NCBI GenBank assembly: GCA_002269645.1
Contig: NIVC01000019.1
Coordinates: forward strand, 1,364,001-1,428,000
Origin: Macrostomum lignano
Taxonomy: Eukaryota
DNA length: 64,000 bases
Reading direction: 5' to 3'
Shown here: in pieces, positions 14,511-46,430 of the stretch
Layout of the letters: every line of letters starts with the position of its first letter
How positions within the stretch are numbered: position 1 is the stretch's first letter
Position numbers and translations under genes: made by a program
Notes under the pieces: model-generated
Seen by the model: the letters and a program-made list of their open reading frames with translations, nothing else
What the model was told of the DNA's origin: nothing
Databases searched by the model: none

Positions 14511-14951
14511 ATAATCCTAAAGTGCAGTAAAATAGTTTGACTCTTTTCTAAAGCACGCATCCGCGGGTTTTTAACATTTATTCCAAAAGGGATTATTTTT
14601 GTTTTAATTGTATAAAGGGAAAATGAAAAAGAGCCATTTTACTACAAACTATTGATTAAGCAAACAACTCTATCAGAGTTCTACTTTTAAAGAAGTCAAC
14701 TGCTGCTATAATATATTCAATGTTTTACTCCTTGTGCATACTTATTGCAATAATTCTAGTACTACAATGCAGTTAATGGCAAGCTAGAAATATTGTATGG
14801 AGTTCTGACAAAGTCTATAACAAGAGTGTCTATTTAATGTCTGTTAAGATATACTTATGCCCATCAATGTTGTTTAGCATGTTAGGATTAGTTATCTAAT
14901 ATGATAAACACCTTACTTATCTGTGAATTGCATGTACTAAGTGCCGCAAGC

Positions 14952-15170
14952 ATGCAAGCAGGTGCTGCATATTTGCTTCTGTATAATGGTGTGCAGTGCA
15001 TTGGCTGGCTCGCCATCCTACTGTTAGCTGAGCTGTCAGCCATCAACAATGCTCCTCCATATCCTTCTGTCACTACACTGTTGCAACTGTTTCAAACTGC
15101 CGCAGTGCTAGAGATTGTGCACTCCGCTGTGCGCCTGGTTCGATCGCCCGTGTTCACCACGGCTATTCAG
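14952..15170 (+). CDS. HACD: Very-long-chain 3-hydroxyacyl-CoA dehydratase (PTPLA/PHS1 family), exon 1
   Basis: MQAGAAYLLLYNGVQCIGW...FQTAAVLEIVHSAVRLVRSPVFTTAIQ|gtaact; phase 0. Confidence 0.93.
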
Positions 15171-15339
15171 GTAACTGATTCACGGTTTGGACTGTATGTG
15201 AACACTCCGCTAAAATTGTGTAGCAGGGCATGCTTTTACACGACTGATAGTAGGCTCAAACTGCGGAATTTGTCCGTAAATAGGTTAAGTGAAGGCTTTG
15301 TGGGATTCTTTCTAAGCAAAGAACAGTTATCGTCTAGAG

Positions 15340-15475
15340 CAGGGGTCGGCAAACTTTTCCTCAATGACCAGACAGACAGAACCTATCGCAGACTGCGCGC
15401 CAGAGGGGGAGAGAGTAGAGGGAATAGAGAAGAGAGCAGAGAGCATGCATGTCTCTGGCCCGCAGTCTTAGGAGG
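15340..15475 (+). mobile_element. hAT-type MITE fragment with a short internal GA-rich tract
   Basis: CAGGGGTCGGCAAACT terminus; resembles the 7475 element. Confidence 0.5.
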
Positions 15476-15749
15476 CGAGAGGTCTGGCCAAGGCGATTCA
15501 CAAAAATGTCGACCAAAACGACGTAGTACTAATTATGTGACGAGGCATTTAGCCTTGAAAAATGCAGCTATAGTTACTTCTGCCGTTTACCCAAATTACG
15601 TTAAATTTTGCATTAGGGTTTCTCTCATAGGTAAGTCGCATTTCTGGTCAAAAAGTAAATCGCACGGCCGGATTAAATTTCGAAGTTGGGCATTTATGGA
15701 AAATAGATGAGGGAATAAAGGAGAGGAGAGGAGAGAAGGGAGGGGGTGT

Positions 15750-16150
15750 TCTATCTGTAACAGGGTCGGGCTGTGTCTATCTGTAACAGGGTCGGGCTGT
15801 GTCTATCTGTAACAGGGTTGGGCTGTGTCTATCTGTAACAGGGTCGGGCTGTGTCTATCTGTAACAGGGTCGGGCTGTGTCTATCTGTAACAGGGTCGGG
15901 CTGTGTCTATCTGTAACAGGGTCGGGCTGTGTCTATCTGTAACAGGGTCAAGCTGTGTCTATCTGTAACAGGGTCGGGCTGTGTCTATCTGTAACAGGGT
16001 CGGGCTGTGTCTATCTGTAACAGGGTCAAGCTGTGTCTATCTGTAACAGGGTCGGGCTGTGTCTATCTGTAACAGGGTCGGGCTGTGTCTATCTGTAACA
16101 GGGTCGGGCTGTGTCTATCTGTAACAGGGTCGGGCTGTGTCCAATTGCAT
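15750..16150. repeat. 26-bp minisatellite (CTATCTGTAACAGGGTCGGGCTGTGT)n in the HACD intron
   Basis: About 15 near-identical units. Confidence 0.95.
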
Positions 16151-16246
16151 GTAGCCTGGGCTGTGTTCATAACAATCGTTTAGGTTGCCTGTTGTACTTT
16201 TATTCAAGCATGACAATTAAATACTAAATCGCACCTGTGTCCGCAG

Positions 16247-16687
16247 GTGTTCTCCCGGGTGCTGCTAGTGTGGGGCATTCTGTACACGGTGCCGGATCCG
16301 TCAGTGACCGAGTCCATCGGCTGCATGCTGCTCATCATTGCCTGGAGCGTCACCGAGGTCATGCGCTATGGCTACTACGCCTTGAACCTGATCGGCTTCC
16401 GGCCATTCCCCCTGCTGTGGGCTCGCTACAGCCTGTTCATTGTGCTGTACCCAATGGGCGTAACCGGGGAGTTGCTATGCATCTACGCTGCTCTGCCCAT
16501 AATTGGCAAGCGTGGCATCTATTCAATTAGCATGCCGAATAGTTTTAATTTTGCATTCGATTACGGCTACTGCCTGATTGGCATCATGCTGTCCTACCTG
16601 GTGTTCTTTCCCCAGCTCTACTGCTACATGTTTGCTCAGAGAAAGAAAATGCTGCGACTTGAAGATGCCAGACCGCACGCTGATTAA
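16247..16687 (+). CDS. HACD: 3-hydroxyacyl-CoA dehydratase, exon 2 (last); protein is 219 aa
   Basis: ccgcag|VFSRVLLVW...AWSVTEVMRYGYY...RYSLFIVLYPMGVTGE...; family motifs carrying the catalytic Tyr and Glu. Confidence 0.95.
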   Translation: MFSRVLLVWGILYTVPDPSVTESIGCMLLIIAWSVTEVMRYGYYALNLIGFRPFPLLWARYSLFIVLYPMGVTGELLCIYAALPIIGKRGIYSISMPNSFNFAFDYGYCLIGIMLSYLVFFPQLYCYMFAQRKKMLRLEDARPHAD

Positions 16688-18570: not shown

Positions 18571-18756
18571 ATAAAATTTGAAAGCCTAGATTTTATTAAT
18601 ATTATATACTTATGAAAGCTTATTTCCTATTTTCAGTTCATTTTGGCACGCTGCCAAAATAGCAAGCTCGAAAGACTAATAGGCGCATTAAATAATAGGC
18701 TGCACGATTTTACTAATTTCTAAGCATTGAAGGCTCAACCACACAAGCAGCACACC

Positions 18757-20688
18757 ATGGTTGACGAAGAGGAAATGATGAAAGAACTGGAAGCAATGTA
18801 CGTTGAAGAAGACAAGAAGAAAGGCAAAAAGGCTGGTAAAGCTCCCAAGAAGCCAGCGACAGGCAAGGCTGGTGGTGCTGGGCAAGATGAGAGTCATGAT
18901 GACGAGGCCGGCAAGAAGGAGGAAGCCGAGAAGAAGCCACCGACTGCGGATAGCGGCGACAAGAACGGCGTTGCGGCCAAGGCTGATGCGCCTGTGGCCC
19001 CTGCCGCAGCAGCGCCAGCAAAGAAGACCGAGGCAGAAAAGCGCAAAGAGAAGAAGGAACGTGAGAAAGCTAAAAAGGCAGCAGAAAATGCCGCAAAAAA
19101 GCCAGACAATGAAGCTGAGGCAAAATCTGTCGAGCCGAAGCAGGAGCAGAAACAGCAAGATGAATTTAAAAAGCCTGATGAGGCTGGCAAGGTGGAAGCC
19201 AAGGAAGAAAAGGCGGAAGACGAGGCCGATGGCGAAGGTGCAGGCGAAGGTGGAAAAAGCGAAGAGAAAGAAATGTCTGCTGCCAAAAAGAAAAAGCTAA
19301 AGAAAAAAGAGAAGGAAAAGGAAAAGAAAGCGGCAGCGGCCGCGTCTGGCGGAGCAGCTGCTGGAGGAGGCGAGGCGAAGAAGCCGACCAGCGCTGTGGC
19401 GAAGCTGATCAAGCAGCAGCTGGAGAAGCAGCGCGAGGAAGAGGAAAAGCTGCGCCGCCAGGAAGAGGAGGCCGAACGAAAGCGCGAAGAGGAGCGTCTT
19501 CGTCGCGAGGAAGAAGAGCGGTTGGAGCGCGAGCGCAAGGAGCGGCGCAAGCAAAAAGAAAAGGAGCGTAAGAAGCGACTAAAAGAGGAGGGCAAGCTGT
19601 TAACCCAGAAGCAGAAGCAGGATAGGCAGCGGCTGCAGCAGATGATCCAACTGAGCAGTGTAGAGCTACCGGCAGCTGCTGAAGATGGCGCTGAGCAGCA
19701 AGAACAGAAACCAGCTGAGCAGCAACAGAAAAAGAAGCCGAAATACGAGAAGCTGAAGCGGCGCAAGCCTGCTGCATCGCAGGCAAATCAAGAATCATCG
19801 GAACAAATGCCGGCGCCAATCGAGACTGTGAAGGCGGCCGATGATGCAGTGCCCGAATCATGGGAGGATGCTGCGATGGACACTACGTGGGATAAAATGG
19901 AGACCAACGATGAATGGGCGCCTATTACCACGCCGAAAGAGAAGCAGGCAGGAGCGAAGGCGGCTGCTAAAGACCAGGACGATGATGAAGGATCGTCATC
20001 TGACGACGATGAAGATTCTGATGATGATAACAACGAAGACGAGTCCGAAGAAGAGACCGCCAAAGACGAGGATGTCGATCCTATTGATCGAGCTCGCCAG
20101 CGCATCGCCAAGCGTCGTGAAACCGCAATCGCCAACGCAGAAGCCTTGGTCGACTCGCCGGACGTTGTACTTCGCTGCCCTCTAGTCTGCGTGCTTGGCC
20201 ACGTAGACACTGGCAAGACATCAATCTTAGACAAACTGCGCAGGACCCACGTGCAGGACGGCGAAGCTGGCGGAATCACGCAGCAGATTGGTGCCACCAA
20301 TGTGCCGGCTGCCTCCATACTGACCTCCACACGGATGGTGAAGTCGTTTAATCAAAACGAAATGCGCCTGCCTGGCCTGTTGATTATCGATACGCCCGGC
20401 CACGAGTCGTTTAGCAATTTGCGCTCTCGCGGCTCCAGCCTGTGCGACGTTGCCATCCTTGTCGTTGACATAATGCACGGCATCGAGCCGCAGACTATTG
20501 AAAGCATTCAGCTGTTAAAAGACCGCGGCACTCCGTTTATTGTGGCACTGAATAAAGTCGATCGACTGTACGACTGGCAAAAGAATGCAAATGTGGATGT
20601 GTTTGCCACGCTGAAGAAACAGTCTCAAACCACTAAGAATGATTTCCAGGACAGGCTAAACCAGGTGGTGGCGCAGTTCGCTATGCAG
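18757..20688 (+). CDS. EIF5B: Translation initiation factor eIF5B, exon 1
   Basis: Lys/Glu-rich N-terminus, then G1 GHVDTGKT, GGITQQIGA, G3 DTPGH, G4 NKVD; donor CAG|gttagt; ATG chosen at 18757. Confidence 0.96.
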
Positions 20689-20714
20689 GTTAGTGTGACT
20701 TGCTATCAGTTTTT

Positions 20715-21225
20715 ATGTAACTCGGGTTCACCCGTGAAAGGAATCGCTAGAGTCATTGCGAACAACTCACTAGTGGCTCTAGCGACTCTGAAGCGTCTCT
20801 TGTGGCTTTAAAACGATTTAAACTACTGCAATGCGACGGAGGGTCCTGAAAGTCGCAAAAGAAAAGAGAGTCGTTGCGTCATCGCTAAATTTTCTATTAA
20901 CTCAATTAGACAACGTGGAATTGTTAGCGAAATGCGATTCTTAATCACAAGGTGACGCAGATGCGCTTTAGACTCTAGAACGACTCTATAGCCCCAGAAT
21001 CATCATAGAAGTGCCGCAGAGTCGCAGACAATGAAACGCCTCAAATTGACTCTCAGGCGACTTTTTGGCGACTTGTACGTAACGTTTCATTGTTTTAGAG
21101 TCGTTTAGAGTCACTTCTTTCTTCTGTTTTACCAGTGTTACTGGCAACGACTTTGAAACAAATCTGTGGCAACGCAAGCGACTCTGGGACGCTTCTTGGC
21201 CTGGGTACTGTTTTCATCGGGTCAT
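20715..21225 (-). mobile_element. Second copy of the GAGTCG-rich interspersed element, without the SINE insertion
   Basis: Reverse complement of 21181-21205 is CAGTACCCAGGCCAAGAAGCGTCCCAGAGT, a single copy of the SINE target; body aligns by eye to 3530-3900. Confidence 0.7.
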
Positions 21226-27975: not shown

Positions 27976-28126
27976 CACCTTAATCAACTTAACCTTAATC
28001 CTTAATAAGCTAATTAATTTGTTCGTTGCTCCTCAACCCGTGGCAACAACAGATATGCGCAACTTCAGATATTGGAACTTTATAAACTCAATCTAATACA
28101 ATTAATTACCTATTCCCGCAACTCAG

Positions 28127-28420
28127 GTGAAGGAAATCACTGGCCTAGGCACAACCATTGATGTCTGTCTGGTCAATGGCAAGCTGCGCGAGTCCGAGAC
28201 CATTGTTCTCGCTGGCCAGGAGGGGCCCATTGTTACTCAGATTCGCGGCCTGCTGATGCCCGCGCCTATGAAAGAGATGCGAGTGAAGAACCAGTACGAC
28301 AAGTTCAAGGAGGTCAAGGGGGCGCAGGCTGTGAAGATTATCGCCAAGGATTTGGAGAAGGCCTTGGCTGGCTTGCCGCTCTATTCTACTAAGAATGCTG
28401 ACGAGATTGAAGTGTTCAAG
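28127..28420 (+). CDS. EIF5B: eIF5B exon 3
   Basis: cag|VKEITGLGTTIDVCLVNGKLRE...GPIVTQIRGLLMPAPMKEMRVK...IEVFK|gtgagt. Confidence 0.96.
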
Positions 28421-28469
28421 GTGAGTTTATTGGCGAGTCTGCTTTCAGGTGCAATTCTCCATGAGTGCC

Positions 28470-28811
28470 TTTTTATTAGAGACAGGGAGCCGTGTGCACC
28501 CTGGCGCACTTTATGCGACATTGTCGTCACACAACCTGCGAGAGGCATTGCTGCCCATTCCGCCGACTCCCCTGAGCAGGCACACAAGCACACACACACA
28601 GGAGTGTACAGCGGCCCTAACTTTATTTATCGTTAGGCATGTACACTTCACTGTGCCCTGGGGGTTGGCCCTCAAGACCGTTAATTGCACGAGCAGAGCC
28701 AAGCCGACATTCCAATTTAGCTCCAAATTAATTATGTGACTGCACTTGGAATCGAGCCTGGACCGCTAGCACATCAGAGCGCCGTGCTAGACCCCGAGGC
28801 TACAGCCCTCC
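28470..28811 (-). mobile_element. tRNA-derived SINE, full length
   Basis: Reverse complement starts GGAGGGCTGTAGCCTCGGGG..., contains GGCTCGATTCC, ends CTCTAATAAAAA; flanks CATGAGTGCC / TAAGAGTGCC resemble a TSD. Confidence 0.85.
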
Positions 28812-29872
28812 TAAGAGTGCCACTCAGAGTGAATTCTCTATAAGAGTGCCACTCAGAGTAAATTCTCTATAAGAGTGTCACTCAGAGGGAATTCTCTATA
28901 AGAGTGCCACTCAGAGGGAATTCTCTATAAGAGTGCCATTCAGAGTAAATTCTCTATAAGAGTGCCACTCAGAGTGAATTCTCTATAAGAGTGCTATTCA
29001 GAGGGAATTCTCTATAAGAGTGCCATTCAGAGTGAATTCCCTATAAGAGTGCCACTGAGATTGAATTCTTTATAAGAGTGCCACTCAGAGTGAATTCTCT
29101 ATAAGAGTGCCATTCAGAGTGAATTCCCTATAAGAGTGCCACTCAGAGTGAATTCTCTTTAAGAGTGCCACTCAGAGTGAATTCTTTATAAGAGTGCCAC
29201 TCAGAGTGAATTCTCTATAAGAGTGCCACTCAGAGTGAATTCTCTATACATTACCACTCAGAGTGAATTCTTTATAAGAGTGCCACTCAGAGTGAATTCT
29301 CTATAAGAGTGCCACTCAGAGTGAATTCTCTATACATTGCCACTCAGAGTGAATTCTCTATACATTGCCACTCAGAGTGAATTCTCTATAAGAATGCCAC
29401 TCAGAGGGAATTTTCTATAAGAGTGCCATTTAGAGGGAATTCTATAAGAGTGCCCTCAGAGGGAATTCTATAAAAGAGCGCCATTCAGAGGGAATTCTCT
29501 ATAAGAGTGCTACTCAGAGGGAATTCTCTATAAGAGTGCCCTCAGAGGGAATTCTATAAAAGAGTGCCACTCAGAGTGAATTCTCTATAAGAATGCCACT
29601 CAGAGGGAATTTTCTATAAGAGTGCCATTTAGAGGGAATTCTATAAGAGTGCCCTCAGAGGGAATTCTATAAAAGAGCGCCATTCAGAGGGAATTCTCTA
29701 TAAGAGTGCTACTCAGAGGGAATTCTCTATAAGAGTGCCCTCAGAGGGAATTCTATAAAAGAGTGCCACTCAGAGGGAATTCTCTATAAGAGCGCCATTC
29801 AGAGGGAATTCTCTATAAGAGTGCCACTCAGAGGGAATTCTCTATAAGAGTGCCACTCAGAGGGAATTATAG
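28812..29872. repeat. 29-bp minisatellite (AGAGTGCCACTCAGAGTGAATTCTCTATA)n
   Basis: About 36 units. Confidence 0.95.
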
Positions 29873-30626
29873 AATCAGATGCTTCTATAGGCAGCGCGGG
29901 CAACTAGTCAATATTTTTGTCAGTAAAAGCGCAGTGCACTTACACCCCTAGGAAAATTGTGTAGAGAATTCTAGATTCCCGCAGCCCTAATAGTTCTATA
30001 TTGCTCTCTACTGTAGAATTTGCAGTTATTTCTCTGGAATAAGACCGTCTGCACTGCGCAGCGTTGGCGTTACAAGTTTTGATTGCTGCTGCTGAGCCAG
30101 CGTTTCCTTGCTTCTGGGGTGTATAGCTTGACTGCTGTGGATTACGGGGTGTGGATAGGTTGCGGGCTGGCGCAGACACGCACTGTGCCATCCTAATCTA
30201 TCAGCTAACACTAGCAGCAATATTGACCGCAATCATGTAGTGTGCCCTGCTAGGTCGCGCTGCCTTCCTGATGGTAAACTGATGGGGAATATCCTTCTTG
30301 TAGAAGAGGAGATTTGCTTTCTTGCTTTCATTCGCTACGCAGTAAATTTTCTTGTTTGACACATTTTTGTCTTGCATATTTCGCACCCGCCGCTGGCAAA
30401 CTGGAGTGGGGGGAGGGGTCTGCTTTTTTTGGGGGTCTGCTATCAGACATTGTCCTTTAGGGCCTGAGGCGCGGCAGCCTTCCCAAAGTAATTCGTCGGG
30501 ATATTGCATGAGCTGCATCCGGTTTGCCATCTATATGGATTTTTTTACAATTAGCATTTCGCTTTTCCTAGTCAGTATGCGGTGTTTCTGGGGCGTTGGG
30601 CTTATATGTACCCGAGTTTTCGTATA

Positions 30627-30641
30627 GATAAATAGATAGAC

Positions 30642-30683
<42 letters not shown>

Positions 30684-30684
30684 G

Positions 30685-30760
<76 letters not shown>

Positions 30761-30890
30761 CAGATAGATAGATAGATAGACATATAGATAGATAGACATA
30801 TAGATAGATAGATAGATAGATAGATAGACAGATAGATGGATAGATAGATAGATAGACAGATAGATGGATAGACCGGCAGACAGATAGATT
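30627..30890. repeat. (GATA)n microsatellite
   Basis: Read directly. Confidence 0.95.
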
Positions 30891-31724: not shown

Positions 31725-32325
31725 GAGACAGGAACCTTCAGGAGTCTGGGCGAGTGAGACAGGAACCTTCAGGAGTCTGAGCGAGTGAGACAGGAACTTT
31801 CAGGTATTACAGGAACCTTCAGGAGGGTGAGCGAGTGAGACAGGAACCTTCAGGAGTCTAGGCGAGTAGGACAGGAACCTTCAGGAGTCTGAGCGAGTGG
31901 GACAGGAACCTTCAGGAGGGTGAGCGAGTGAGACAGGAACCTTCAGGAGTCTAGGCGAGTAGGACAGGAACCTTCAGGAGTCTGAGCGAGTGGGACAGGA
32001 ACCTTCAGGAGTCTGAGCGAGTGACAGGAACCTTCAGGAGTCTAGGCGAGTAGGACAGGAACCTTCAGGAGTCTGAGCGAGTGGGACAGGAACCTTCAGG
32101 AGTCTGAGCGAGTGACAGGAACCTTCAGGAGTCTAGGCGAGTAGGACAGGAACCTTCAGGAGTCTGAGCGAGTGGGACAGGAACCTTCAGGAGTCTGAGC
32201 GAGTGACAGGAACCTTCAGGAGTCTAGGCGAGTAGGACAGGAACCTTCAGGAGTCTGAGCGATTGAGACAGGAACTTTCAGGTATTACAGGAACCTTCAG
32301 GAGGGTGAGCGAGTGAGACAGTACA
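31725..32325. repeat. About 31-bp minisatellite (GAGTGAGACAGGAACCTTCAGGAGTCTGAGC)n
   Basis: Read directly. Confidence 0.93.
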
Positions 32326-32786: not shown

Positions 32787-33129
32787 CTATAACATGTCGC
32801 CTCCAGCACCTCTGTACATTTCTGCTCTGGCCTGGTACGGATTATCCGCGTGATTTCCGCGCAGCGGAATGCACTCTTCTAAGAATTGTTGCTGCTGGCC
32901 CGCCTGTCGCTGCTGCTGATAGCCGTCCCCTGTCTGGTGCTTGTTCTTCAGTATGCCCCGGTTTAGAGTCTTTGTGCCGCTGGCGGCGCCGCCAGCCGAC
33001 TGGCCGCCAATCGCGTCCTCGCCGCCGCCAGACAGATTGAATCGAATCTCGCCCTTCTGCCTGTCCCTAGCCGGCAGTGTGGACGTAGAGTAGGAGGTCG
33101 GTACGCTCTGGTACTGCGGGTACTGTTGG

Positions 33130-33178
<49 letters not shown>

Positions 33179-34539
33179 ACCGCACAGTTCCGTAGGTGTC
33201 CGCTGTGCCAGCTATTGTTGACATCGGCAGAATTGACGGCGGAGGGGGCGGAGGCGGAGTTGAAGACACGGAGGAAGCCGCTGAAGAGACTGCCGCTGTC
33301 ATTGCGTATTGCTGCTGCTGCTCTACCATGGGTCTCACAGGCTGCGTCGGCTTGGCGTTAGTGTACATTAGAGCGGCTGCCGCTGGCGGCGGAGGCGGCG
33401 GCAAGGGCGGCTCAATATCGTTAGACGGTGGCGGCAGCATAGGATTTGCCAATTTCACCGCGGTAGCAGCTTGATATTGCTGCTGCTGTTGGTGCTGTTG
33501 GCGCATTGTGTGCGTCATCACCGGACTCTCATTGCCGATGGTTGTAGCTCCGAGGTCTCGCACTAAGAAATCGCCGCCACCCATGCCGCCGCCTCCGCCA
33601 TAGCCGCCTCCACCGCCGCTGCCGATCATGCCGCCCATGACTCCGCCGCCTCCATTGGTACCGTTGGCCGAATCCTCCGATGCTATGTCTCCGGTGCTGC
33701 CGTCGATGCCGTCTCCGGGGCCTCCAGGCCTGTGCAACTGTTCGCCCTGCCAGCTCTTTGTCGGCTGCACGAGATCTATGCAGCGCTGCCTCCGGCACAG
33801 GCCGTGCCAGATCAGCGGGCTAAACAGGCCAGCCAGTAGGAATAGAAAGGCGGCTACGGCCAGCAGTAGGTTAGCATAGTTGGGCACCTGTATGGACGGG
33901 CCGATGATGCGGTAAAACAGATTGCCAGCGCTGGGCCACAGCAGCGCCTGGATGCTGACGTGCATGCGGAGACCGGCTAGTGCAATGGCCAGGCCTGGCG
34001 TGACAAAGCCGACCAGCACTAGGAACCAGGGCCGGAGGGCTACCCCGCCGCCAACCTCCTTGATGAAGCGGACGCCTCCGTAGCCGTGAGCCACAGCTAG
34101 ACAGGCCAGAGCCGTCAGCAGCAGAGGCAGCCAACGCACAGTTGACATTCGGTACAGATCTGGCAGGCTGAGATTCTGCTTGAAATGCTGCTGCACAAAG
34201 CCCAAGCCGGCGCCAAAGGTGCACACAATTAGACTAGCTAGTAGACGCGCAGTCCATTGTCGCCTACGAAGGCTCTGACAGCCGCGAAATTTGTCAGATA
34301 CGGCGCGCACCCAAGCGTCGGCGCGTACCAGCATTCTAGTTAAGAATAGCCAGCCAAGAGCGCTGCGCCAAAACCAGAGCCAAATTGTTGGCGAGATCAT
34401 GTTAGTTGGCAAGCCTTCCAGCAGCTCCAGGTAGACTCGGACATCGTCACCGGCTCGATCGTCGGCCTCTGGCGGAGCGATCGCCCAGCCAGGTTGATTG
34501 GCGCTGGCTGAAGGCACGGTTGGCAGTCTGACGTTGTAG
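32787..34539 (-). CDS. Divergent SLC6/NSS-fold membrane protein, exon 2 (last): distal TM segments plus Gly/Gln/Pro-rich tail
   Basis: ttctgcag|C TAC AAC joins exon 1 in phase 2; several hydrophobic segments; polyG, polyQ and polyP; AATAAA at 32544-32549 on the minus strand. Confidence 0.8.
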
Positions 34540-35750
34540 CTGCAGAAAGCGAATTGCGGTGGGTTGGTCAAGTCACTTTGATCTCTAATTACTTATAGCA
34601 CAACGAAACTTCACGTTAATATGTAGCCAAAGTTGCCTACGTACTCTATGCTCTATATCATTGAATTTGTTTGCTTTGAAAAATTGATTTTAGTTCTTGT
34701 CCTGTCGTCCAACCAGTGAGCTGCAGCCACTTCTTTCATTAGTTATGTTTGGCTCGGTCTGTCTCTGTCGACTTTCCTTTCCCCTGGTGTCTTATCAAAG
34801 CTCATGGGATTCCAGCACTATGCTAGGAGCTTCAGTAATTCGACACTTGAAAGACAACTAAATCCCTTGGGTCAGAAACTGAAGAATAACACTGACTTGC
34901 CCACTATCCAATCTCCAATCTTTGACTCTCAGCCTGAAGCGACTGGCCCTTTCTGAAGCTTCAGTCCTTCATCTGAGCGCACTGCTTATTGTGTATTACT
35001 AAGCGATCTGAAGTTTTTAAGACTAGCATTTGTAAGTTTTTACAGGTGAAAATTAGACTTAATCCATAATAATGCTTAACTTTTACCAAGTTTCTAAACT
35101 GAGAAAGTCTCTTCTGCTGGTAAATAAATAAATTTTATCTATTTTAGCGCAACTGTGCATAGGAAAAGAGCCAGTTAGAATTCTAACGGCAATCGAAAAG
35201 TTTCAGTTTTGCGCAGTTATAAGTGAAAAAAACTTGAAGTTCACGCACGTGACCGCTGCTTGTGTATAGTCCAGCACAATATCATTCCTAGGATCTTACC
35301 ACCTTGCTGCCTTCTTTAGAGAAAAAGTTGAACTTTTCATAGTTTTATTAGCTGGCGATCAAGTACATTGCTAGGACGCTAGTCAGCTTCACTGGCTTCG
35401 GGCGAGAGGGATCCGATATATTTGGGGCGAGAGGGAAAAACTCTTCAACAGTATGGGACCGTGGCGAAAACGGCTATGACTATGCGAGCTGCAGGATGGG
35501 ATTATATCTTTGGAATTTTTCCCCAGTATCCCTTGGCGGCTTGGCAGCTCTGCGACTTGGCACGATGTCGCTTTACTAGCAATAGCATAGCCAGATTGTG
35601 ACAGGAAGAGAGAGACGAGCGGTGGGCAGGAAGGAAGCTGGAAAGGAGTTCAAATATTTGTCCCAAAAAGAGAAAAAGAGACTAGCGGACGTGTCAGTCA
35701 GATCCCAAACTTGTGGCTCTACTAGCCATGTAGGAATCCTCAGTCCTCAC

Positions 35751-36601
35751 CGAGGCATCTGACAGGTGCCGTTAGAGCTACTAGCTGGCGCAGGTGCCGC
35801 ACCAGAAGCGTCAATTGCCGATGCTGGAGAAGCTGCGTCGCCAAATAAAGCCGGATGTCCCTGACAGAATTGCATAACCAATGCGCTAGTTGACACAGTG
35901 TAGAGCGCGTGCAATAGAAATACTAGGCCAACTGTTAGGCCGGAGTCTAGGAATGCGTTGGTTCGCGGCTTCCTGTAACTGCCCAGCGCTATTAGCGCTC
36001 CTGTGCCGCAGGCGTACAGGTAGGGCAGTAGTGAGGCTCGCAGCAGGTCTAGCAGGCTATCTGGCAGTTTAGCTGACAGTTGCCAAAGGCGTTGGAGAGC
36101 GGCCTCAGAGTGGCCCAGAGACAGTGTGCGAGCGGCCACGGCGCACAGGGCGCCGATGCACAAGAGGGAGCCGAGGACCCACAGTTTGCTGGCATACTTT
36201 GGCCACCAGGTTAGCACAGGTAGCAGTACGCCTAGCCACAGGGCTAGCTGAAAATAAGCCGTGTATTGTAAGCCACCGATGTTGTGGTGCCGCTGCAGAT
36301 GATCCAGCACGTCGGCATTGGTAGCCAATAGGTCTAGCGCGCTGCAGGTGAGCATCAGCAGGCCGATGCCTTTCCAAGCCGGGCCGAAGCACCAGCATTT
36401 CACTGGGCCAAACTGACTTCGCTGGCCCAGCGCCAATTCGCAAAACACTAACGGCTGCACTAGAACCAGTATGCCGGCTAGTTGAACTAGGACAGGCCAT
36501 AGTCCGTACTCGATGTAGGCTCGCAGAGGCAAATACACGAATAGCTGAGGCGTTAGCAGGGCTATGCAGCTAATCAGGGTGCATTCGGCTCGAAGCATCA
36601 T
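35751..36601 (-). CDS. Divergent SLC6/NSS-fold membrane protein, exon 1
   Basis: PLVFCELALGQ...W..GPAWKGIG and GTGALIALGSY match SLC6 TM2/TM3 and TM6 motifs; donor CG|gtgag; the frame is open to 36691 so an upstream exon is possible. Confidence 0.8.
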
Positions 36602-38044
36602 GATTGCAGCGATTTTGTGTTTTTTATTCTGTCCAGTTGACCCGCGTCTGGTCAGGGTGTAAACAGGACGGAGGTTCGCTTTGTTCAACAACTGCTGAAC
36701 TCGGCCATGTCTGTGCCTCAGTGTTGGCTTGGCTTATAAGAGGGAGAGAAAATTATTATCCTGACTAAGGACGAACGGGCAGAGGACTATGGAGGGGAAG
36801 AACGGAGGATCGGAGTGGGGTGGGCTCTGGTTTAGCCTCGGACAGATTTGGAACGGAACAGAACTGAACGGAGGAATGGGGTGGTGGGGGGAGCTTATTC
36901 GTCTCGGCCCACTGTTTTTGGGAGGCGAGGAGGGTGACGCGGGGGTTGGTCCGGCCGGCAGGAGCCCTCCAAGCGCGGAGCTCCCACCCCCTCCTCCTGC
37001 CCGAGGAACTGAAAATACTTGGCCCTGCCCCCCATATTGTCCTTCCCTTCCTCCTATCATTCTCCACTCACCCGAGGCGGCCTACCCCATCCCTGACTCA
37101 TTCCTTCAGCTCCTACCCTCTGGCCAAAGCTTGCAATGAGGAGCTTTGAATCTATATAACTTTAAGCCCTTATTTCTCTGTTCCCTCCCTCTCCCACCAT
37201 TTCGCCTCATTCATTGGCTGCCCGTGCGCATTGGAAGTCCTCCCCTCAACTGCTCCTGCTCTCGGTCTCGTCTCTCGCTGCTCTCGGTCTCGTCTCTCGC
37301 TGCTCTCTCTTATCTTCAGCCAATGCTGCGACCGTTTGTATTACTTTTGGAGTGACTCGCCTGGCATTGCTAACACCCCTCCCCCGTCTCCTCGCCACGA
37401 CGAGACCAAACCAAAAAATCCGATCCTACCCTCCCTCTTCAATTTCCTCTGCCCCCCCCCCCCTATTTAGTCGGCTTCTGCTCCCCATTTCTCCTTACTG
37501 TTTAAAACTGCTAATGCGGATCGGTCCTGTAACTGTTGTTTTTCAGCTGAGTGTCTCATTCTGCCTGCCACTCGTTCTCAATGACCTCCCCCCCACCCAT
37601 ACAGCTCATTAAGCTGCCAAATCGAGCTCTTGTGCTTGCTTTGGAATCGAACTGTCTTTTCTTATTTGCTTTCCATTCGTCATTTAGCTTTCTACGAATA
37701 TTTGAAAAAACGAGTTGGCCCGTTTATTTGATTAAGAGTCCAAAACCCACAGGCTTGTTGAGTCTTCTGTACGATGGCTCATTGCTGTGTTGGACTTGTC
37801 TGTATTTTCATGTTGATTTTAACAGTTTGCACGCAACCTACCTTCTTAGGTTAGGGGTCTACCAGTCTAGATTGTCCAAGTATTTTATCGTTACTAGAAT
37901 GGTTTTTTATGTCTTCACCAGTGTTTTTATGAGTTTGACTTTCGCATATACTTTGCAGTTATTGTTCTGTCTACTGGTCTAACCTTTTCTATAGTCTTTA
38001 CGAAGAAAGAAATAGCACGTTTGAATTTCGGAACACTCCTTAGT

Positions 38045-38310
38045 ATTAGGGCCTTTTCATATTACCAATTCCAGAACCAGAATCGGTTCGGAATTCCAAG
38101 AAAAACAGCAGTATAACTATTAAACTCTGTTAATATTTGACTGCCTTAACAACCTAACTTAGCACAATTTTTCACTTTCTTCTTGGCGATTGTCATTCAA
38201 TAATAAAAACTTTATAGCACGTATCTCCCTCTAGTTATGGAGACAAAAAGTTATACTTCACAAATTGGTTCTGGTTCTGGAACCAGAGCAAGCAATATGA
38301 AAAGCCCATT
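38045..38310. mobile_element. Small MITE-like element with inverted termini GGGC(C)TTTTCATATT
   Basis: GGGCCTTTTCATATTACCAATTCCAGAACCAGAA versus TTCTGGTTCTGGAACC...AATATGAAAAGCCC. Confidence 0.5.
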
Positions 38311-38449
38311 AGTCAGTTTAGTCAATAAATGGCAATACCTATATGAGCAGGAAATTAGTTTGCACATTGGCTCAGCTGCAGGGGCTCCGGGCACCCGGAT
38401 ACAGCAGGTATGCATTGACGCCCATTCCGCTAAGCCCTGGCGACCACGG

Positions 38450-39030
38450 TCAACTGGTGCTGCGATGTCGGACAGGGAGATCCGGTGGTGCCGGTGTGCA
38501 CAGCGCGGTGCCTCTCCGGAGAGTCTGGGAGGTGGTTGGTCGCTCGCCCGATAGCCTTTAGGTAGCGGACGAGCTGACAGAAATTCTTGGGCCCGAAAAC
38601 TTCGGAAAGGTCCCGGTTTGGGCCGAAGTAGGCGAGCGTATTTTAAGTAAAGGCATATTTACGTTCACATTCACATATGAAATGCTCCACATTCTCACAC
38701 CGGAGAGGCAGAAAGGGCATTTCCTAACTACGGATTTCCCCTGGAGGCAGCGATGACTGGCGAAACGGCCCGAGAGGGCCATGGTGTCCTGATGCCCTGA
38801 TTTCCCTGCGGTTGAATCCAAGCAGGGCCCTATGGAAGGCGGGGAAAGGACAGGGGACAGCCGCGCGCGGGATTGCCGACAGTCGGGGCGTTTGCCCACC
38901 TCTCCCTGTGCTTTGAAGCCACCACTGGTCCCGGTCGAACTAGTAAGACCATGCAATCGGCTAACTCGTTTGTCGGATGGCCAGAGTGCCCGGCGATTCA
39001 CTTTCCAGTTTGCACCTTTCAATATTTGTA
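38450..39030 (-). mobile_element. 3' fragment of a non-LTR retrotransposon ORF2 (CCHC knuckle), frameshifted
   Basis: Across frames: ALLGFNRREIR / FASHRCLQG...KCPFCL / ENVEHFICEC / LVRYLKAIG. Confidence 0.7.
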
Positions 39031-43319: not shown

Positions 43320-44350
43320 TTAGGGATTGCTAATCTAGCCCACAGGGATGCAGGAATAGAATGGATTGCTAATCTAGCCCACAAGGATGCAGGAATAGAA
43401 TGGATTGCTAATCTAGTCCACAAGGATGCAGGAATAGAATGGATTGCTAATCTAGCCCACAAGGATGCAGGAATAGAATGGGTTGCTAATCTAGCCCACA
43501 AGGATACAGGAATAGAGTGGATTGCTAATCTAGTCCACAAGGATGCAGGAATAGAATGGATTGCTAATCTAGCCCACAAGGATGCAGGAATAGAACGGAT
43601 TGCTATCTAGCCTAATCAAATGAAGGAATAGAATGGATTGCTAATCTAGCCCATGCAGATACAGGAATAGAGTGGATTGCTAATCTAGCCCACAAGGATG
43701 CAGGAATAGAATGGGTTGCTAATCTAGCCCACAAGGATGCAGGAATAGAATGGATTGCTAATCTAGCCCACAAGGATGCAGGAATAGAACGGATTGCTAT
43801 CTAGCCTATTCAAATGAAGGAATAGAATGGATTGCTAATCTAGCCCATTTAAATGCAGGAATAGAATGGATTGCTAATATAGCCCATTCAAATGCAGGAA
43901 TAACTGGATTGCTAATCTAGCCCACAAGGATGAAGGAATAGAATGGGTTGCTAATCTAGCCCATTTAAATGCAGGAATAGAATGGATTGCTAATCTAGCC
44001 CACAAGGATGCAGGAATAACTGGATTGCTAATCTAGCCCACAAGGATGAAGGAATAGAATGGGTTGCTAATCTAGCCCACAAGGATGCAGGAATAGAATG
44101 GATTGCTAATCTAGCCTATTTAAATGCAGGAATAGAACGGATTGCTAATCTAGCCCACAAGGATGCAGGAATAGAATGGATTGCTAATCTAGCCCATTCA
44201 AATGCAGGAATAACTGGATTGCTAATCTAGCCCACAAGGATGAAGGAATAGAATGGATTGCTAATCTAGCCCATTTAAATGCAGGAATAGAACGGATTGC
44301 TAATCTAGCCCACAAGGATGAAGGAATAGAATGGATTGCTAATCTAGCCA
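43320..44350. repeat. 39-bp minisatellite (GATTGCTAATCTAGCCCACAAGGATGCAGGAATAGAATG)n filling eIF5B intron 4
   Basis: Read directly. Confidence 0.95.
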
Positions 44351-44438
44351 ATGAGGATATAGATTATTTAGGGTAGGATAACTTTGTACTCTAACTTATG
44401 CAGGTGAAACCAATCGTTAACCCCGAATTCCCCTCCAG

Positions 44439-44790
44439 GTGGGCGGTCATTCTGGCCTTCGACGTGAAGGTGGAGCGCGAGGCGCAGGAGCTGGCGGACA
44501 GTCACGGCGTGAAGATTTTCACTGCCGACATCATCTACCACCTGAGCGACGCGTTCATCAAATGGCGAGACGATCGAATCAAAGCGGAACGGGAGAAGTT
44601 CAAAGACATCGCCGTGTTCCCCTGCAAGCTGCGCGTCCTGCCGCAGTTCATCTTCAACAGCCGGGACCCAATCGTGTGCGGCGTCATTGTTGAGGCCGGC
44701 ATTCTCAAGGTGGGCACGCCGATCTCGGTGCCTAGCAAGGAGTCCGTGTACCTCGGCCGGGTCGAGTCGCTCGAGCTCAATCATAAAAAG
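44439..44790 (+). CDS. EIF5B: eIF5B exon 5
   Basis: cag|G TGG = (Q)WAVILAFDVKVERE...IFTADIIYHL...AVFPCKLRVLPQFIFNSRDPIVCGV...NHKK|gtgact. Confidence 0.96.
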
Positions 44791-44839
44791 GTGACTTATT
44801 GCATTTTTTATGTCCTGGTGTCTATTTTTTTGTCTTTCT

Positions 44840-45365
44840 TAGCGTGTCTTAGTGTCTGTCTCAGCTTCTGTCTCAGTGTCCGTCTCAGTTTCCGTCTTAG
44901 CGTCTGTCTTAGTGTCGGTCTCAGTGACTGTCTTAGTGTCGGTCTCAGTGACTGTCTTAGTGTCGGTCTCAGTGTCTGTCTCAGTGACTGTCTTAGTGTC
45001 TGCCTTAGTGTCTGTCTCAGTGACTGTCTCAGTGTCTGCCTTAGTGTCTGTCTCAGTGACTGTCTTAGTGTCTGTCTTAGTGTCTGTCTCAGTGACTGTC
45101 TCAGTGACTGCCTTAGTGTCTGTCTCAGTGTCTGTCTCAGTGACTGTCTTAGTGTCTGTCTTAGCGTCTGTCTTAGTGTCGGTCTCAGTGACTGTCTTAG
45201 TGTCGGTCTCAGTGACTGTCTTAGTGTCGGTCTCAGTGACTGTCTTAGTGTCGGTCTCAGTGACTGTCTTAGTGTCGGTCTCAGTGACTGTCTTAGTGTC
45301 GGTCTCAGTGACTGTCTTAGTGTCTGCCTCAGTGTCTGTCGCAGTGTCTGTCTTAGCGTCTTTCT
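44840..45365. repeat. 12/24-bp minisatellite (TAGTGTCGGTCTCAGTGACTGTCT)n filling eIF5B intron 5
   Basis: Read directly. Confidence 0.93.
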
Positions 45366-45548
45366 TGGTGTCTTTCTTAACGTGTCCAAATTGTATTCTG
45401 AATGATCCAGTGTACTCTAACTTTGTAGGCTCTTCTGCTCTGATTGCTATTGCTGAGCAGTTCTAAGTACTCGTAACAAAGCGGTTTAGCTCCTTTAATT
45501 GAAAATTCATGCTTTATAAAGTCCTTTACACTACATATCGGCAAACAG

Positions 45549-45919: not shown

Positions 45920-46430
45920 TACTGCTGCACCCTCATCCCTGATCCTTCAGCGGGCCACCACTGCACCCTCCGTGATCCTTCAGCGGGCCACCACTGCACC
46001 CTCCGTGATCCTTCAGCGGGCCACCGCTGCACCCTCCCTGATCCTTCAGCGGGCCACCACTGCACCCTCCCTGATCCTTCAGCGGGCCACCACTGCACCC
46101 TCCCTGATCCTTCAGCGGGCCACCGCTGCACCCTCCCTGATCCTTCAGCGGGCCACCACTGCACCCTCCTTGATCCTTCAGCGGGCCACCGCTGCACCCT
46201 CCTTGATCCTTCAGCGGGCCACCGCTGCACCCTCATCCCTGATCCTTCAGCGGGCCACCGCTGCACCCTCATCCCTGATCCTTCAGCGGGCCACCGCTGC
46301 ACCCTCCTTGATCCTTCAGCGGGCCACCGCTGCACCCTCCTTGATCCTTCAGCGGGCCACTGCTGCACCCTCCCTGATCCTTCAGCGGGCCACCGCTGCA
46401 CCCTCCCTGATCCTTCAGCGAGCCTTCAGC
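45920..46430. repeat. 33/36-bp minisatellite (CTGCACCCTCCCTGATCCTTCAGCGGGCCACCA)n
   Basis: Read directly. Confidence 0.95.

What the first reader, a model, noticed from the sequence alone, without database searches (positions are those of the whole stretch)
32787..36601. Probable pseudo-transporter: SLC6 fold with eroded Na+/substrate sites and a large signalling-type tail
Seen: a two-exon, about 867-aa ORF keeps SLC6 scaffold motifs (LISCI, PLVFCELALGQ, W..GPAWKGIG, GTGALIALGSY). The TM1 signature G-x-G-N-V-W-R-F-P is replaced by LLTPQLFVYLP, EL2 is very short, and the TM8-like segment reads WFWRSALGWLFL rather than LGLDS. An Ala/Ser/Pro-rich insert of about 70 aa spans the intron in the EL4 region. 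The C-terminal tail of about 330 aa has polyG, polyQ and two PPPPPPP tracts, and ends D-M-L (fits a class III PDZ motif). Known: the unwound TM1/TM6 and TM8 residues form the Na1/Na2 and substrate sites in LeuT/DAT/SERT. Inference: a non-transporting receptor or scaffold derived from a neurotransmitter transporter, possibly a lineage-specific family.
Basis: partly seen in the sequence, partly recalled or inferred. Interest (0 to 1): 0.75.

Follow-up and report, generated by a model that had tools for sequence, protein, structure and literature searches.

The report
Divergent SLC6 transporter-like flatworm gene
A two-exon gene of the flatworm Macrostomum lignano encodes a real but extremely divergent relative of the sodium-driven neurotransmitter/amino-acid transporters (SLC6) that has lost almost every residue that binds sodium, chloride and substrate yet is kept intact by selection, so it probably does something other than classical sodium-coupled uptake.

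Summary
On the minus strand, exon 1 (36601-35751) and exon 2 (34539-32787) join through GT/AG into an 867-aa ORF. Two NCBI models of Macrostomum lignano paralogues use the same junction. The membrane domain passes Pfam SNF (48 bits, cutoff 27, E 1e-12) and aligns end to end with GAT1/SERT/LeuT (hhalign 91%). All three Na1 side-chain ligands, all four Cl- ligands, the TM3 substrate Tyr and the extracellular-gate Arg are replaced. Arg352 sits at the Na2 Ser position and Arg356 in the S1 pocket, facing new Asp90/Asp97 on TM3. Structural and gating residues are kept (E55, G199/G201, Y209, D366, D411). It is not a pseudogene: between two diverged copies the core has 15 synonymous and 3 non-synonymous changes (pN/pS 0.07), the tail 0.31, and the exons have no indels while the intron has many. 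No relative was found among 1.84 billion protein representatives. Canonical Na+/Cl- symport is very unlikely. AlphaFold failed for lack of homologues. The "signalling tail" argument is weak. Verdict: a new variant of a known kind, of moderate interest.

The parts
35751..36601 (-). Coding exon 1 (residues 1-283 plus 2 nt): start ATG at 36601, TM1-TM7 and the start of the EL4 insert
   Evidence: ORF and frame. Pfam SNF 30.6 bits on this exon alone. Gap-free, 0.8% diverged from the paralogous loci.
34540..35750 (-). Intron (GT at 35750-35749, AG at 34541-34540), phase 2
   Evidence: Splice signals read directly. Stops in all three frames. 5.3% substitutions and about 140 gap columns against L001/L002. 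NCBI models use the same junction.
33798..34539 (-). Exon 2, membrane part (residues 284-531): end of the EL4 insert, EL4b helix, TM8-TM12
   Evidence: Pfam SNF profile positions 341-477. HMMER alignment to GlyT2. hhalign. Hydropathy.
32787..33797 (-). Exon 2, cytoplasmic tail (residues 532-867 plus stop): RQRCIDLVQP membrane-proximal motif, polyG, polyQ, two poly-Pro tracts, C-terminus GGDML
   Evidence: Composition and motifs. No Pfam family. pN/pS 0.31 against L002. Only in-frame indels, apart from one 1-nt deletion specific to L001. Full tail annotated in P0003.
36512..36583 (-). TM1 (residues 7-30), CTLISCIALLTPQLFVYLPLRAYI: Na1 Asn becomes L20, hinge Gly-x-Gly becomes T17-P18-Q19, extracellular-gate Arg becomes Y23 (His in the other copies)
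   Evidence: Anchored on P25 and on the invariant 30-residue spacing to E55. Y23H seen.
36296..36367 (-). TM3 (residues 79-102): substrate Tyr becomes T94; new acidic residues D90 and D97 at pocket- and vestibule-lining positions (GAT1 L136, I143); D100
   Evidence: Ungapped extension from the conserved K77-G78-x-G80 motif. Moderate confidence, because hhalign gaps this helix.
35975..36046 (-). TM6 (residues 186-209): Cl- Gln becomes L191, Na1/Cl- Ser/Thr becomes L195; G199-x-G201 and S208-Y209 retained
   Evidence: Ungapped agreement of MAFFT, hhalign and HMMER.
34293..34385 (-). TM8 (residues 336-366), IWLWFWRSALGWLFLTRMLVRADAWVRAVSD: T351 at the Na2 Asp/Thr position, R352 at the Na2 Ser position, R356 at an S1-pocket position; also R342, D358, R362; D366 is the retained intracellular-gate Asp
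   Evidence: The same register comes from HMMER against GlyT2, MAFFT, hhalign and the ungapped D366 anchor.
35751..35863 (-). EL4 insert, first part (residues 247-283): Ala/Ser/Pro-rich, with NGT sequon at N277
   Evidence: No difference from L002 across 64 codons.
34464..34539 (-). EL4 insert, second part (residues 284-309), followed by the conserved EL4b helix (VRVYLELLEGLP)
   Evidence: HMMER alignment to GlyT2 EL4b.
36602..37200 (-). Conserved non-coding 5' flank (probable 5' UTR and promoter); in-frame stop upstream of the ATG and a short uORF
   Evidence: 1-2% substitutions with small indels against L002. Sequence read.

Best explanation
Shown. This is a functional, selectively maintained gene of Macrostomum lignano. 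It encodes a 12-TM protein that belongs to the SLC6/SNF family by descent. It lacks the side chains that bind Na1 (L20, L195, V227), Cl- (Q40, L191, L195, H231) and the substrate (T94 in place of the TM3 Tyr), and it lacks the extracellular-gate Arg (Y23).

Inferred. It cannot run the classical Na+/Cl--coupled symport cycle. The central cavity is instead lined by its own charged side chains. Arg352 takes the place of the Na2 Ser, and Arg356 sits at an S1 position on TM8. Both would face Asp90 and Asp97 on TM3. I take this to be a 'self-liganded' LeuT fold in which an internal Arg-Asp network replaces the ion and the substrate.

Most likely reading (speculative). The protein works as a membrane-embedded sensor, scaffold or regulatory subunit rather than as a concentrative transporter. 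The retained inner-gate pair (Y209, D366), the TM6 Gly-x-Gly and the TM2 Glu would keep the fold and perhaps a conformational switch. The 336-aa disordered cytoplasmic tail (poly-Pro, polyQ, C-terminal -D-M-L) would offer docking sites. Expression appears low, with reads in a head fragment, which would fit a few specialised cells.
For: - Family membership: Pfam SNF 48 bits, E 1e-12; GlyT2 and GAT1 are the best PDB matches; hhalign 91% over 457 columns.
- Twelve hydrophobic segments in canonical order.
- Site table, on reference sequences verified at 79 numbered positions. Losses are selective: 1 of 8 ligand positions kept against 6 of 7 structural/gating positions, p about 0.01.
- The TM8 register is the same in three alignment methods.
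- Purifying selection: 15 synonymous and 3 non-synonymous changes in the core, pN/pS 0.07, p 8e-7; tail 0.31, p 0.02. Exons are gap-free while the intron has about 140 gap columns.
- The full tail and the -GGDML end are kept in both gene lineages.
- Precedent for an SLC6 member acting in signalling: C. elegans SNF-12 binds the STAT-like STA-2 (PMC4681281).
- Low transcript counts, with 34 reads in the head-only fragment (PMC7336406 Table S8). The link between that transcript ID and this gene is inferred from the cluster name and the matching 2190-nt CDS length.
Against: - No functional data.
- No 3D model: AlphaFold without homologues gave pLDDT 35. That the Arg and Asp side chains point into the cavity is inferred from homology only, and the TM3 register is only moderately certain.
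- The retained inner-gate residues, TM6 break and TM2 Glu are equally what a working transporter would keep.
- pN/pS of 0.07 in the core is as strict as for a working carrier.
- The tail has no recognisable domain, and its short motifs (PDZ class III, YxxPhi, poly-Pro) occur often by chance. PDZ ligands are common in true SLC6 transporters.
- No orthologues were available, so long-term conservation of the substituted residues is unknown. The selection test covers only the short time since the two copies split (dS about 0.04).
Confidence: 0.4

Rival explanations
1. It is still a carrier, but a Na+- and Cl--independent one (uniporter, exchanger or H+-coupled). The guanidinium of Arg352 permanently takes over the TM1-TM8 bridging role of the Na2 ion, as Lys/Arg do in ApcT, BasC, GkApcT and CaiT. 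The new polar residues (D90, D97, R356, H231, Y194) would form a binding site for a different, probably charged, substrate. A channel-like leak along this charged pathway is a sub-variant.
For: - R352 aligns with the Na2 Ser and T351 with LeuT T354 in three methods.
- Precedent: basic residues at Na2-equivalent positions are essential for transport in Na+-independent LeuT-fold carriers (PMC6472337).
- The elements needed for alternating access are retained: TM6 G-x-G, a Pro in the TM1 break, E55, inner-gate Y209/D366 and outer-gate D411.
- Purifying selection on the core is very strong (pN/pS 0.07).
- The membrane-proximal C-terminal motif RQRCIDLVQP resembles GAT1 KQRIQVMVQP.
Against: - In the known cases the basic residue sits on TM5, not TM8, and no SLC6 member with this arrangement is known to transport.
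- The TM1 hinge glycines and the main-chain-based substrate site are heavily altered (L15, L16, T17, P18, Q19).
- The substrate Tyr and the outer-gate Arg are gone.
- Two Arg and two Asp in one small cavity may simply pair up and close it.
- No 3D model.
Confidence: 0.35
2. It is a regulatory pseudo-subunit. The inactive SLC6 fold forms hetero-oligomers with canonical SLC6 transporters of the same cell and controls their trafficking or activity, in a dominant-negative or chaperone-like way. Its tail anchors the complex.
For: SLC6 transporters form oligomers, and their ER export depends on C-terminal motifs (established knowledge). A related membrane-proximal motif is retained here. The ion sites are lost while the fold is conserved. 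Expression is low.
Against: There is no evidence for any partner. The oligomer-interface helices (TM11/12) are not notably conserved. No canonical SLC6 gene lies in the window.
Confidence: 0.12
3. It is an ordinary Na+/Cl--coupled SLC6 transporter, and the 'eroded' sites are artefacts of misalignment or of a missed exon.
For: Overall identity to references is only about 18-24%, where alignments can slip. hhalign places gaps in TM3 and TM7.
Against: - TM1, TM2, TM6 and TM8 are anchored by invariant residues at exact canonical spacings: P25-E55 is 30, E55-G80 is 25, Y209-D219 is 10, and T351 lies 15 residues before D366.
- No Asn, Ser or Thr lies within one residue of the Na1 positions in TM1 and TM6 (sequence).
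- The NCBI models have the same N-terminus and junction.
- There are no extra conserved exon-like blocks.
Confidence: 0.04
4. It is a decaying pseudogene, or an annotation artefact in a repeat-rich polyploid genome.
For: One copy (L001) carries a 1-nt deletion in a C-run that truncates its annotated product to 729 aa. Expression is very low. No homologues were found elsewhere.
Against: - The 867-codon ORF is intact in the window, and an 868-codon ORF is intact in L002.
- pN/pS is 0.07 in the core, p 8e-7.
- Exons are free of indels while the intron is riddled with them.
- Downstream of the L001 deletion the shifted frame stays open and conserved to the same stop. This points to a sequencing error or a very recent lesion.
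Confidence: 0.03

Closest known systems
Canonical SLC6/NSS transporters (human GAT1 and GlyT2 are the best PDB matches; LeuT is the prototype)
   Same: Pfam SNF above threshold. Twelve TMs in the same order. Retained: TM2 PL..E.ALGQ, IL1 W..P..KG.G, TM6 G-x-G...SY, TM7 D, EL4b helix, TM8-end D, TM10 D, TM11 TP, membrane-proximal QR....VQP. A C-terminal hydrophobic PDZ-type end, as in many SLC6 members.
   Different: No Na1 Asn/Ser/Asn. Na2 Ser replaced by Arg. No Cl- site. No TM3 Tyr. No outer-gate Arg. TM1 G-x-G-N replaced by T-P-Q-L. EL2 of about 10 aa without the disulfide or glycosylation sites. A 55-60-aa EL4 insert. A 7-aa N-terminus. A 336-aa low-complexity tail. Four Arg in TM8 and three Asp in TM3.
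C. elegans SNF-12 (SLC6 member acting in epidermal innate-immune signalling through STA-2)
   Same: An invertebrate SLC6-family protein whose documented role is signalling through a cytoplasmic partner rather than a known transport activity (PMC4681281).
   Different: The review still predicts SNF-12 to be a transporter of an unidentified substrate. I did not compare sequences, and no specific similarity to the flatworm protein was found (the exhaustive search found no relative). This is an analogy only.
Transporter-like nutrient sensors with long cytoplasmic tails (yeast Snf3/Rgt2, Ssy1; human SGLT3)
   Same: A transporter fold that no longer transports. In Snf3/Rgt2 a long cytoplasmic C-terminal extension recruits signalling partners (established knowledge; transceptor review PMC5890159 listed).
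   Different: These belong to different superfamilies (MFS, APC, SLC5). Their sensor status was shown by experiment, whereas here it is only inferred. The tail here has no known docking domain.
Na+-independent LeuT-fold carriers with a basic residue at the Na2 position (ApcT K158, BasC K154, GkApcT K191, CaiT R262)
   Same: A positively charged side chain at the place where Na2 bridges TM1 and TM8 (PMC6472337). Here R352 aligns with the Na2-coordinating Ser.
   Different: Those residues lie on TM5 in APC/BCCT families and their position is known from structures. Here the Arg is on TM8 itself, within the SLC6 family, and its position is inferred from sequence alignment only.

Membership tests
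SLC6 / SNF (Pfam PF00209) | Score above Pfam's gathering threshold for the whole protein | tested here: met
   48 bits against a cutoff of 27, E 1e-12, three collinear stretches. Exon 1 alone scores 30.6 bits.
SLC6 / SNF (Pfam PF00209) | Twelve TM helices collinear with LeuT/GAT1 over the full length | tested here: met
   hhalign: 457 aligned columns, probability 91%, E 1.2e-7. Eleven strong hydrophobic segments plus the Trp/Arg-rich TM8 at the expected places.
SLC6 / SNF (Pfam PF00209) | LeuT fold in three dimensions (5+5 inverted repeat, unwound TM1 and TM6) | tested here: inconclusive
   AlphaFold2 with only the two near-identical sequences: mean pLDDT 35.5, pTM 0.20. No fold search was run on it.
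SLC6 / SNF (Pfam PF00209) | TM1 signature G-x-G-N-x-W-R-F-P with the Na1 Asn and the outer-gate Arg | tested here: not met
   T17-P18-Q19-L20-F21-V22-Y23-L24-P25. Only the Pro is kept.
SLC6 / SNF (Pfam PF00209) | Na1 side-chain ligands in TM6 and TM7 (Ser/Thr, Asn) | tested here: not met
   L195 and V227.
SLC6 / SNF (Pfam PF00209) | Na2 ligands on TM8 (Asp/Thr followed by Ser) | tested here: not met
   T351 is kept (LeuT-like), but the Ser is R352. HMMER, MAFFT and hhalign give the same register.
SLC6 / SNF (Pfam PF00209) | Cl- site of eukaryotic members (Tyr TM2, Gln and Ser TM6, Ser TM7) | tested here: not met
   Q40, L191, L195, H231.
SLC6 / SNF (Pfam PF00209) | Structural and gating residues: TM2 Glu, TM6 G-x-G, inner-gate Tyr and Asp, outer-gate Asp | tested here: met
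   E55, G199/G201, Y209, D366, D411.
SLC6 / SNF (Pfam PF00209) | Na+-dependent solute uptake | not testable with these tools
   Needs heterologous expression with radiotracer or electrophysiological assays.
Transporter-derived sensors / pseudo-transporters (Snf3/Rgt2/Ssy1/SGLT3 type) | No net transport despite an intact fold | not testable with these tools
   Only inferred from the missing ligands.
Transporter-derived sensors / pseudo-transporters (Snf3/Rgt2/Ssy1/SGLT3 type) | Cytoplasmic extension that recruits signalling partners | tested here: inconclusive
   A 336-aa tail exists and is kept in both gene lineages with pN/pS 0.31. It matches no domain family, and only short chance-prone motifs are seen.
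Na+-independent LeuT-fold carriers with a basic residue replacing Na2 | Lys/Arg side chain occupying the Na2 position between TM1 and TM8 | tested here: inconclusive
   R352 aligns with the Na2 Ser. It is on TM8, not TM5, and no reliable 3D model shows where its side chain points.

The most novel reading that the evidence does not exclude
This would be the first natural 'self-liganded' SLC6 protein: a lineage-restricted flatworm pseudo-transporter. Arg352 permanently fills the Na2 site, and an Arg356/Asp90/Asp97 network fills the substrate pocket. That would turn a neurotransmitter-transporter fold into a receptor or scaffold (or an ion-independent gated pore) that signals through a long disordered tail.
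Probability: 0.3. Interest if true: 0.7.

Novelty: new variant of a known kind. Interest (0 to 1): 0.5.

Why it matters
SLC6 transporters are major drug targets, and their ion-coupling mechanism has been worked out largely through engineered mutants. A naturally evolved family member under strong purifying selection that has replaced every Na1 and Cl- ligand, and put an arginine at the Na2 serine, is a natural experiment. It bears on what the LeuT fold can do without its ions.

- If it still transports, it would show how an SLC6 protein can become Na+-independent, in parallel with the Lys/Arg solution of APC-family carriers.
- If it does not, it would be a clear SLC6 pseudo-transporter. That would add to SNF-12 as evidence that this family has been recruited for signalling.

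M. lignano has transgenesis and RNAi, so the question can be tested directly. For genome annotation, it also shows that 'hypothetical protein' records with a faint SNF hit can hide intact, constrained genes.

Tried and rejected
1. **Word-indexed homologue searches.** I ran three, with the membrane domain at E 1e-3 and at E 10, and with a profile that included LeuT, GAT1 and SERT. All returned only the gene's own cluster. The failure of the third search to return any canonical SLC6 protein is unexplained. It means the tool could not supply an MSA.
2. **Exhaustive HMMER over 1.84 billion representatives.** It returned only the own cluster plus P0002, which is a translated tandem repeat and was rejected as spurious.
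3. **Metagenome scan.** Sixty-four pattern hits, none confirmed.
4. **AlphaFold2 with the only permitted sequences.** Mean pLDDT 35, unusable. I therefore ran no fold search and did not use the second prediction slot.
5. **Exact look-up of the spliced 867-aa product,** to find assembled transcripts. The tool turned it away and I did not pursue it further.
6. **Passing unspliced genomic frames to Pfam.** I used stop-to-stop segments instead.
7. **Literature.** No paper mentions the gene IDs in its main text. Supplements of three M. lignano papers had nothing. One had low read counts for the same transcript cluster. No survey of flatworm SLC6 repertoires covers it.
8. **Paralogue or missed exon in the window.** tblastn of the model against the window found nothing else. 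The intron has stops in all frames.
9. **MAFFT placement of gaps in TM3-TM5 and hhalign's 7-residue gap in TM7.** Judged implausible inside helices. I used ungapped extension from invariant anchors instead.


Full report
**1. What is there.** The window is eukaryotic DNA from the free-living flatworm Macrostomum lignano. The only database protein that matches the region is NCBI 'hypothetical protein BOX15_Mlig000173g1'. Two long ORFs lie on the minus strand, at 36691-35747 and 34571-32787. Reading the sequence shows an ATG at 36601, a GT donor at 35750 and a polypyrimidine-AG acceptor ending at 34540. Joining 36601-35751 to 34539-32787 gives 2604 nt, that is 867 codons plus a stop, in one frame. 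The intron has stops in all frames. Two independently annotated NCBI models from other copies of the gene (P0001, 729 aa; P0003, 863 aa) start with the same MMLRAEC and use the same junction...CQMPR|YNVRLP.... Minor corrections: the first proline run is PPLPPPPPP, the EL4 insert is about 55-60 aa, and the tail is 336 aa.

**2. Is it SLC6?** Yes, by descent.
- Each exon alone hits Pfam SNF, and the hits are collinear: exon 1 scores 30.6 bits at profile positions 49-89, and exon 2 scores 21.5 bits at profile positions 341-477.
- The joined membrane domain scores 48 bits, E 1e-12, against a gathering cutoff of 27.
- The best solved-structure matches are GlyT2 and GAT1 (E about 1e-4).
- A local profile-profile comparison with GAT1, SERT and LeuT aligns 457 columns end to end (probability 91%, E 1.2e-7).
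- Hydropathy gives eleven strong segments, plus the Trp/Arg-rich TM8 where it is expected.
- The 3D fold could not be tested. With only near-identical sequences allowed as the alignment, AlphaFold2 gave mean pLDDT 35.5. I did not run a fold search on that model.

**3. Site-by-site anatomy.** I then mapped functional sites by ungapped extension from invariant anchors whose spacings match the canonical ones: P25-E55 is 30 residues, E55-G80 is 25, Y209-D219 is 10, plus D366 and D411.
- Lost, Na1: N66, S295 and N327 become L20, L195 and V227.
- Lost, Cl-: Y86, Q291, S295 and S331 become Q40, L191, L195 and H231.
- Lost, TM1 hinge: G-L-G becomes T17-P18-Q19.
- Lost, outer-gate Arg: becomes Y23 (His in the other copies).
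- Lost, TM3 substrate Tyr: becomes T94.
- Changed, Na2: T351 is kept (as LeuT T354), but the Ser is R352.
- New charges on pocket-facing positions: R356 (GAT1 T400, LeuT I359), D90 (L136/V104) and D97 (I143/I111). TM8 carries four Arg and TM3 three Asp.
- Kept: E55 (TM2), K77-G-x-G80, G199-x-G201, S208-Y209 (inner gate), D219, the EL4b helix, D366 (inner gate), D411 (outer gate), the TM11 TP, and a GAT1-like membrane-proximal RQRCIDLVQP.

The TM8 register is identical in HMMER against GlyT2, in MAFFT and in hhalign. The TM3 register is less certain, because hhalign gaps that helix. The losses are selective: 1 of 8 ion-ligand side chains is kept against 6 of 7 structural/gating residues (Fisher p about 0.01). 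I chose those positions after seeing the data, so the test is only indicative.

**4. Is it alive?** Two other loci of the GCA_002269645.1 assembly carry the gene, L001 and L002. They are nearly identical to each other. Both differ from the window copy by 5.3% substitutions and about 140 gap columns in the intron, but by only 0.8-1.3% and no gaps in the membrane-coding exons. This fits the known hidden polyploidy of the species (PMC10468722 abstract).
- Membrane core: 15 synonymous and 3 non-synonymous differences, pN/pS 0.07, binomial p 8e-7.
- Tail: 8 and 8, pN/pS 0.31, p 0.02.
- EL4 insert: no difference in 64 codons.
- A divergence profile shows exactly two gap-free blocks, which coincide with the two exons, and no further exon-like block within about 3 kb upstream.
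- The short 729-aa P0001 product results from one 1-nt deletion in a C-run of the second poly-Pro tract of L001. Downstream of it the shifted frame stays open and conserved to the same ...GGDML stop, and L002/P0003 is intact there. So the tail is part of the gene in both lineages.
- A re-analysis of positional RNA-seq lists transcript Mlig000173.g3. Its length of 2190 nt equals the P0001 CDS. It has 34 reads in fragment A, 0 and 0 in fragments B and C, and 21 in the whole worm. DESeq base means are about 3.5 (PMC7336406 Table S8 and related tables). From my knowledge of Arbore et al. 2015, fragment A is the head-only piece. So the gene is expressed, but at a low level. The link between that ID and this gene is inferred.

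**5. Relatives.** None were found. The three word-indexed searches, the exhaustive HMMER search of 1.84 billion cluster representatives (the second hit is a translated tandem repeat) and a metagenome scan returned only the gene's own cluster. Even M. lignano's own canonical SLC6 proteins are too distant to pass. The gene is therefore a long-branch orphan within SLC6. I could not test whether it is restricted to Macrostomum, because other macrostomid genomes are not in the collections.

**6. How it most likely works.**

Shown: it is an intact, constrained, expressed SLC6-family gene without Na1, Cl- and canonical substrate ligands.

Inferred with good confidence (about 0.8): it cannot perform classical Na+/Cl--coupled symport.

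Beyond that, two mechanisms fit.
- (a) Pseudo-transporter. The cavity is filled by its own R352/R356-D90/D97 network. The fold serves as a sensor, scaffold or regulatory subunit, and the disordered tail serves as a docking platform. Precedents are SNF-12/STA-2 in C. elegans (PMC4681281) and transporter-like sensors with long tails in yeast (established knowledge).
- (b) Na+-independent carrier. R352 replaces Na2, as Lys/Arg do in ApcT, BasC, GkApcT and CaiT, where they are essential for transport (PMC6472337). The new polar residues would bind a different substrate.

I lean slightly to (a), at 0.40 against 0.35. My reason is that the TM1 hinge, the outer-gate Arg and the substrate Tyr are all gone together, and that opposite charges appear on facing helices. 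But the retained inner gate, the TM6 break and the very low pN/pS are just what (b) predicts.

The tail matches no domain, its motifs are short, and PDZ-type C-termini are usual in genuine SLC6 transporters. A misalignment or missed-exon explanation and a pseudogene explanation are both largely excluded (sections 3 and 4).

**7. Comparison and novelty.** By Pfam's criterion and by collinear architecture, the protein is a member of the SLC6/SNF family. It fails the family's mechanistic signatures (TM1 motif, Na1, Na2 Ser, Cl- site). I therefore file it as a divergent SLC6-derived protein, not as a 'sodium:neurotransmitter symporter'. I found no description of it, or of a similar SLC6 variant, in the searchable literature. 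It is a new variant of a known kind. Interest is moderate (0.5). It is a clean natural experiment on the LeuT fold in a genetically tractable animal. So far, though, the evidence comes from one species, is purely computational, and leaves the function unresolved.

**8. Surroundings.** On the plus strand, pieces of an eIF5B/IF-2-type GTPase lie at three places: 18727-20811 (G domain), 28106-28633 (domain II), and 44398-45405 (end of domain III plus domain IV). If these belong to one gene, the SLC6-like gene is nested antisense in one of its introns. Several minisatellites flank the gene.

Noticed in passing
window 18727-20811 (+), 28106-28633 (+), 44398-45405 (+): Three plus-strand ORFs carry successive domains of an eIF5B/IF-2-type translation GTPase: GTP_EFTU 109 bits, GTP_EFTU_D2 23.8 bits, and the IF-2 C-end plus GTP_EFTU_D4. 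If they are exons of one gene, it spans at least 27 kb, and the SLC6-like gene lies antisense inside one of its introns. The exon for the first part of the IF-2 domain was not located. No gene is called at the corresponding place in L001.
   Followed up: partly
window 31725-32282; L001 about 14100-16400: A minisatellite with a 31-bp unit (91-bp higher-order unit, about 15-18 copies) lies 500 bp downstream of the stop codon. The array is about four times longer at the paralogous locus L001.
   Followed up: partly
window 28812-29868, 30624-30872, 43324-44350, 45924-46424: Further tandem arrays: a unit of about 29 bp over roughly 1 kb, (ATAG)n of 249 bp, a unit of about 39 bp over roughly 1 kb directly upstream of the last eIF5B-like ORF, and a unit of about 33 bp over roughly 500 bp. 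All are also present, with different copy numbers, at the paralogous locus.
   Followed up: no
L001 about 13270 (poly-Pro tract; corresponds to window about 33180): A single-base deletion in a C-run truncates the annotated product PAA77381.1 to 729 aa. The near-identical locus L002 and the window lack it, and the downstream frame stays open and conserved. It is probably an assembly error or a very recent lesion. A transcript of the same 2190-nt CDS length appears in the Mlig_37v3 transcriptome table, so it may be real.
   Followed up: partly
L002 polyQ tract (protein positions about 743-747): The NCBI product PAA69868.1 (863 aa) lacks five Gln codons that are present in the genomic sequence of its own locus, whose translation is 868 aa. 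This is an unexplained discrepancy between annotation and genome.
   Followed up: no
window about 38100-38750: About 650 bp are present in the window but absent from the paralogous locus L002, 1.5-2 kb upstream of the gene. It is an insertion or deletion of unknown nature.
   Followed up: no
window 14901-15710 (+): This ORF contains the start of a PTPLA/HACD (3-hydroxyacyl-CoA dehydratase) domain: 32 bits, profile positions 1-30 only. It is probably one exon of a multi-exon gene.
   Followed up: no
window 60500-63800 and 8000-10000: At 60.5-63.8 kb, ORFs of more than 1000 codons are open in all three plus-strand frames in an AT-rich (GC 0.28-0.33), strongly C-over-G skewed stretch with no Pfam hit. 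This is presumably low-complexity or satellite DNA rather than a gene. At 8-10 kb there is an unusual GC skew of +0.49.
   Followed up: no
tool behaviour: A profile containing verified LeuT, GAT1 and SERT sequences returned no SLC6 protein at all from the 5.8-billion-protein word index. This is unexpected for such a large family. It shows that the negative results say little about distant relatives. The exhaustive search is the informative one.
   Followed up: no
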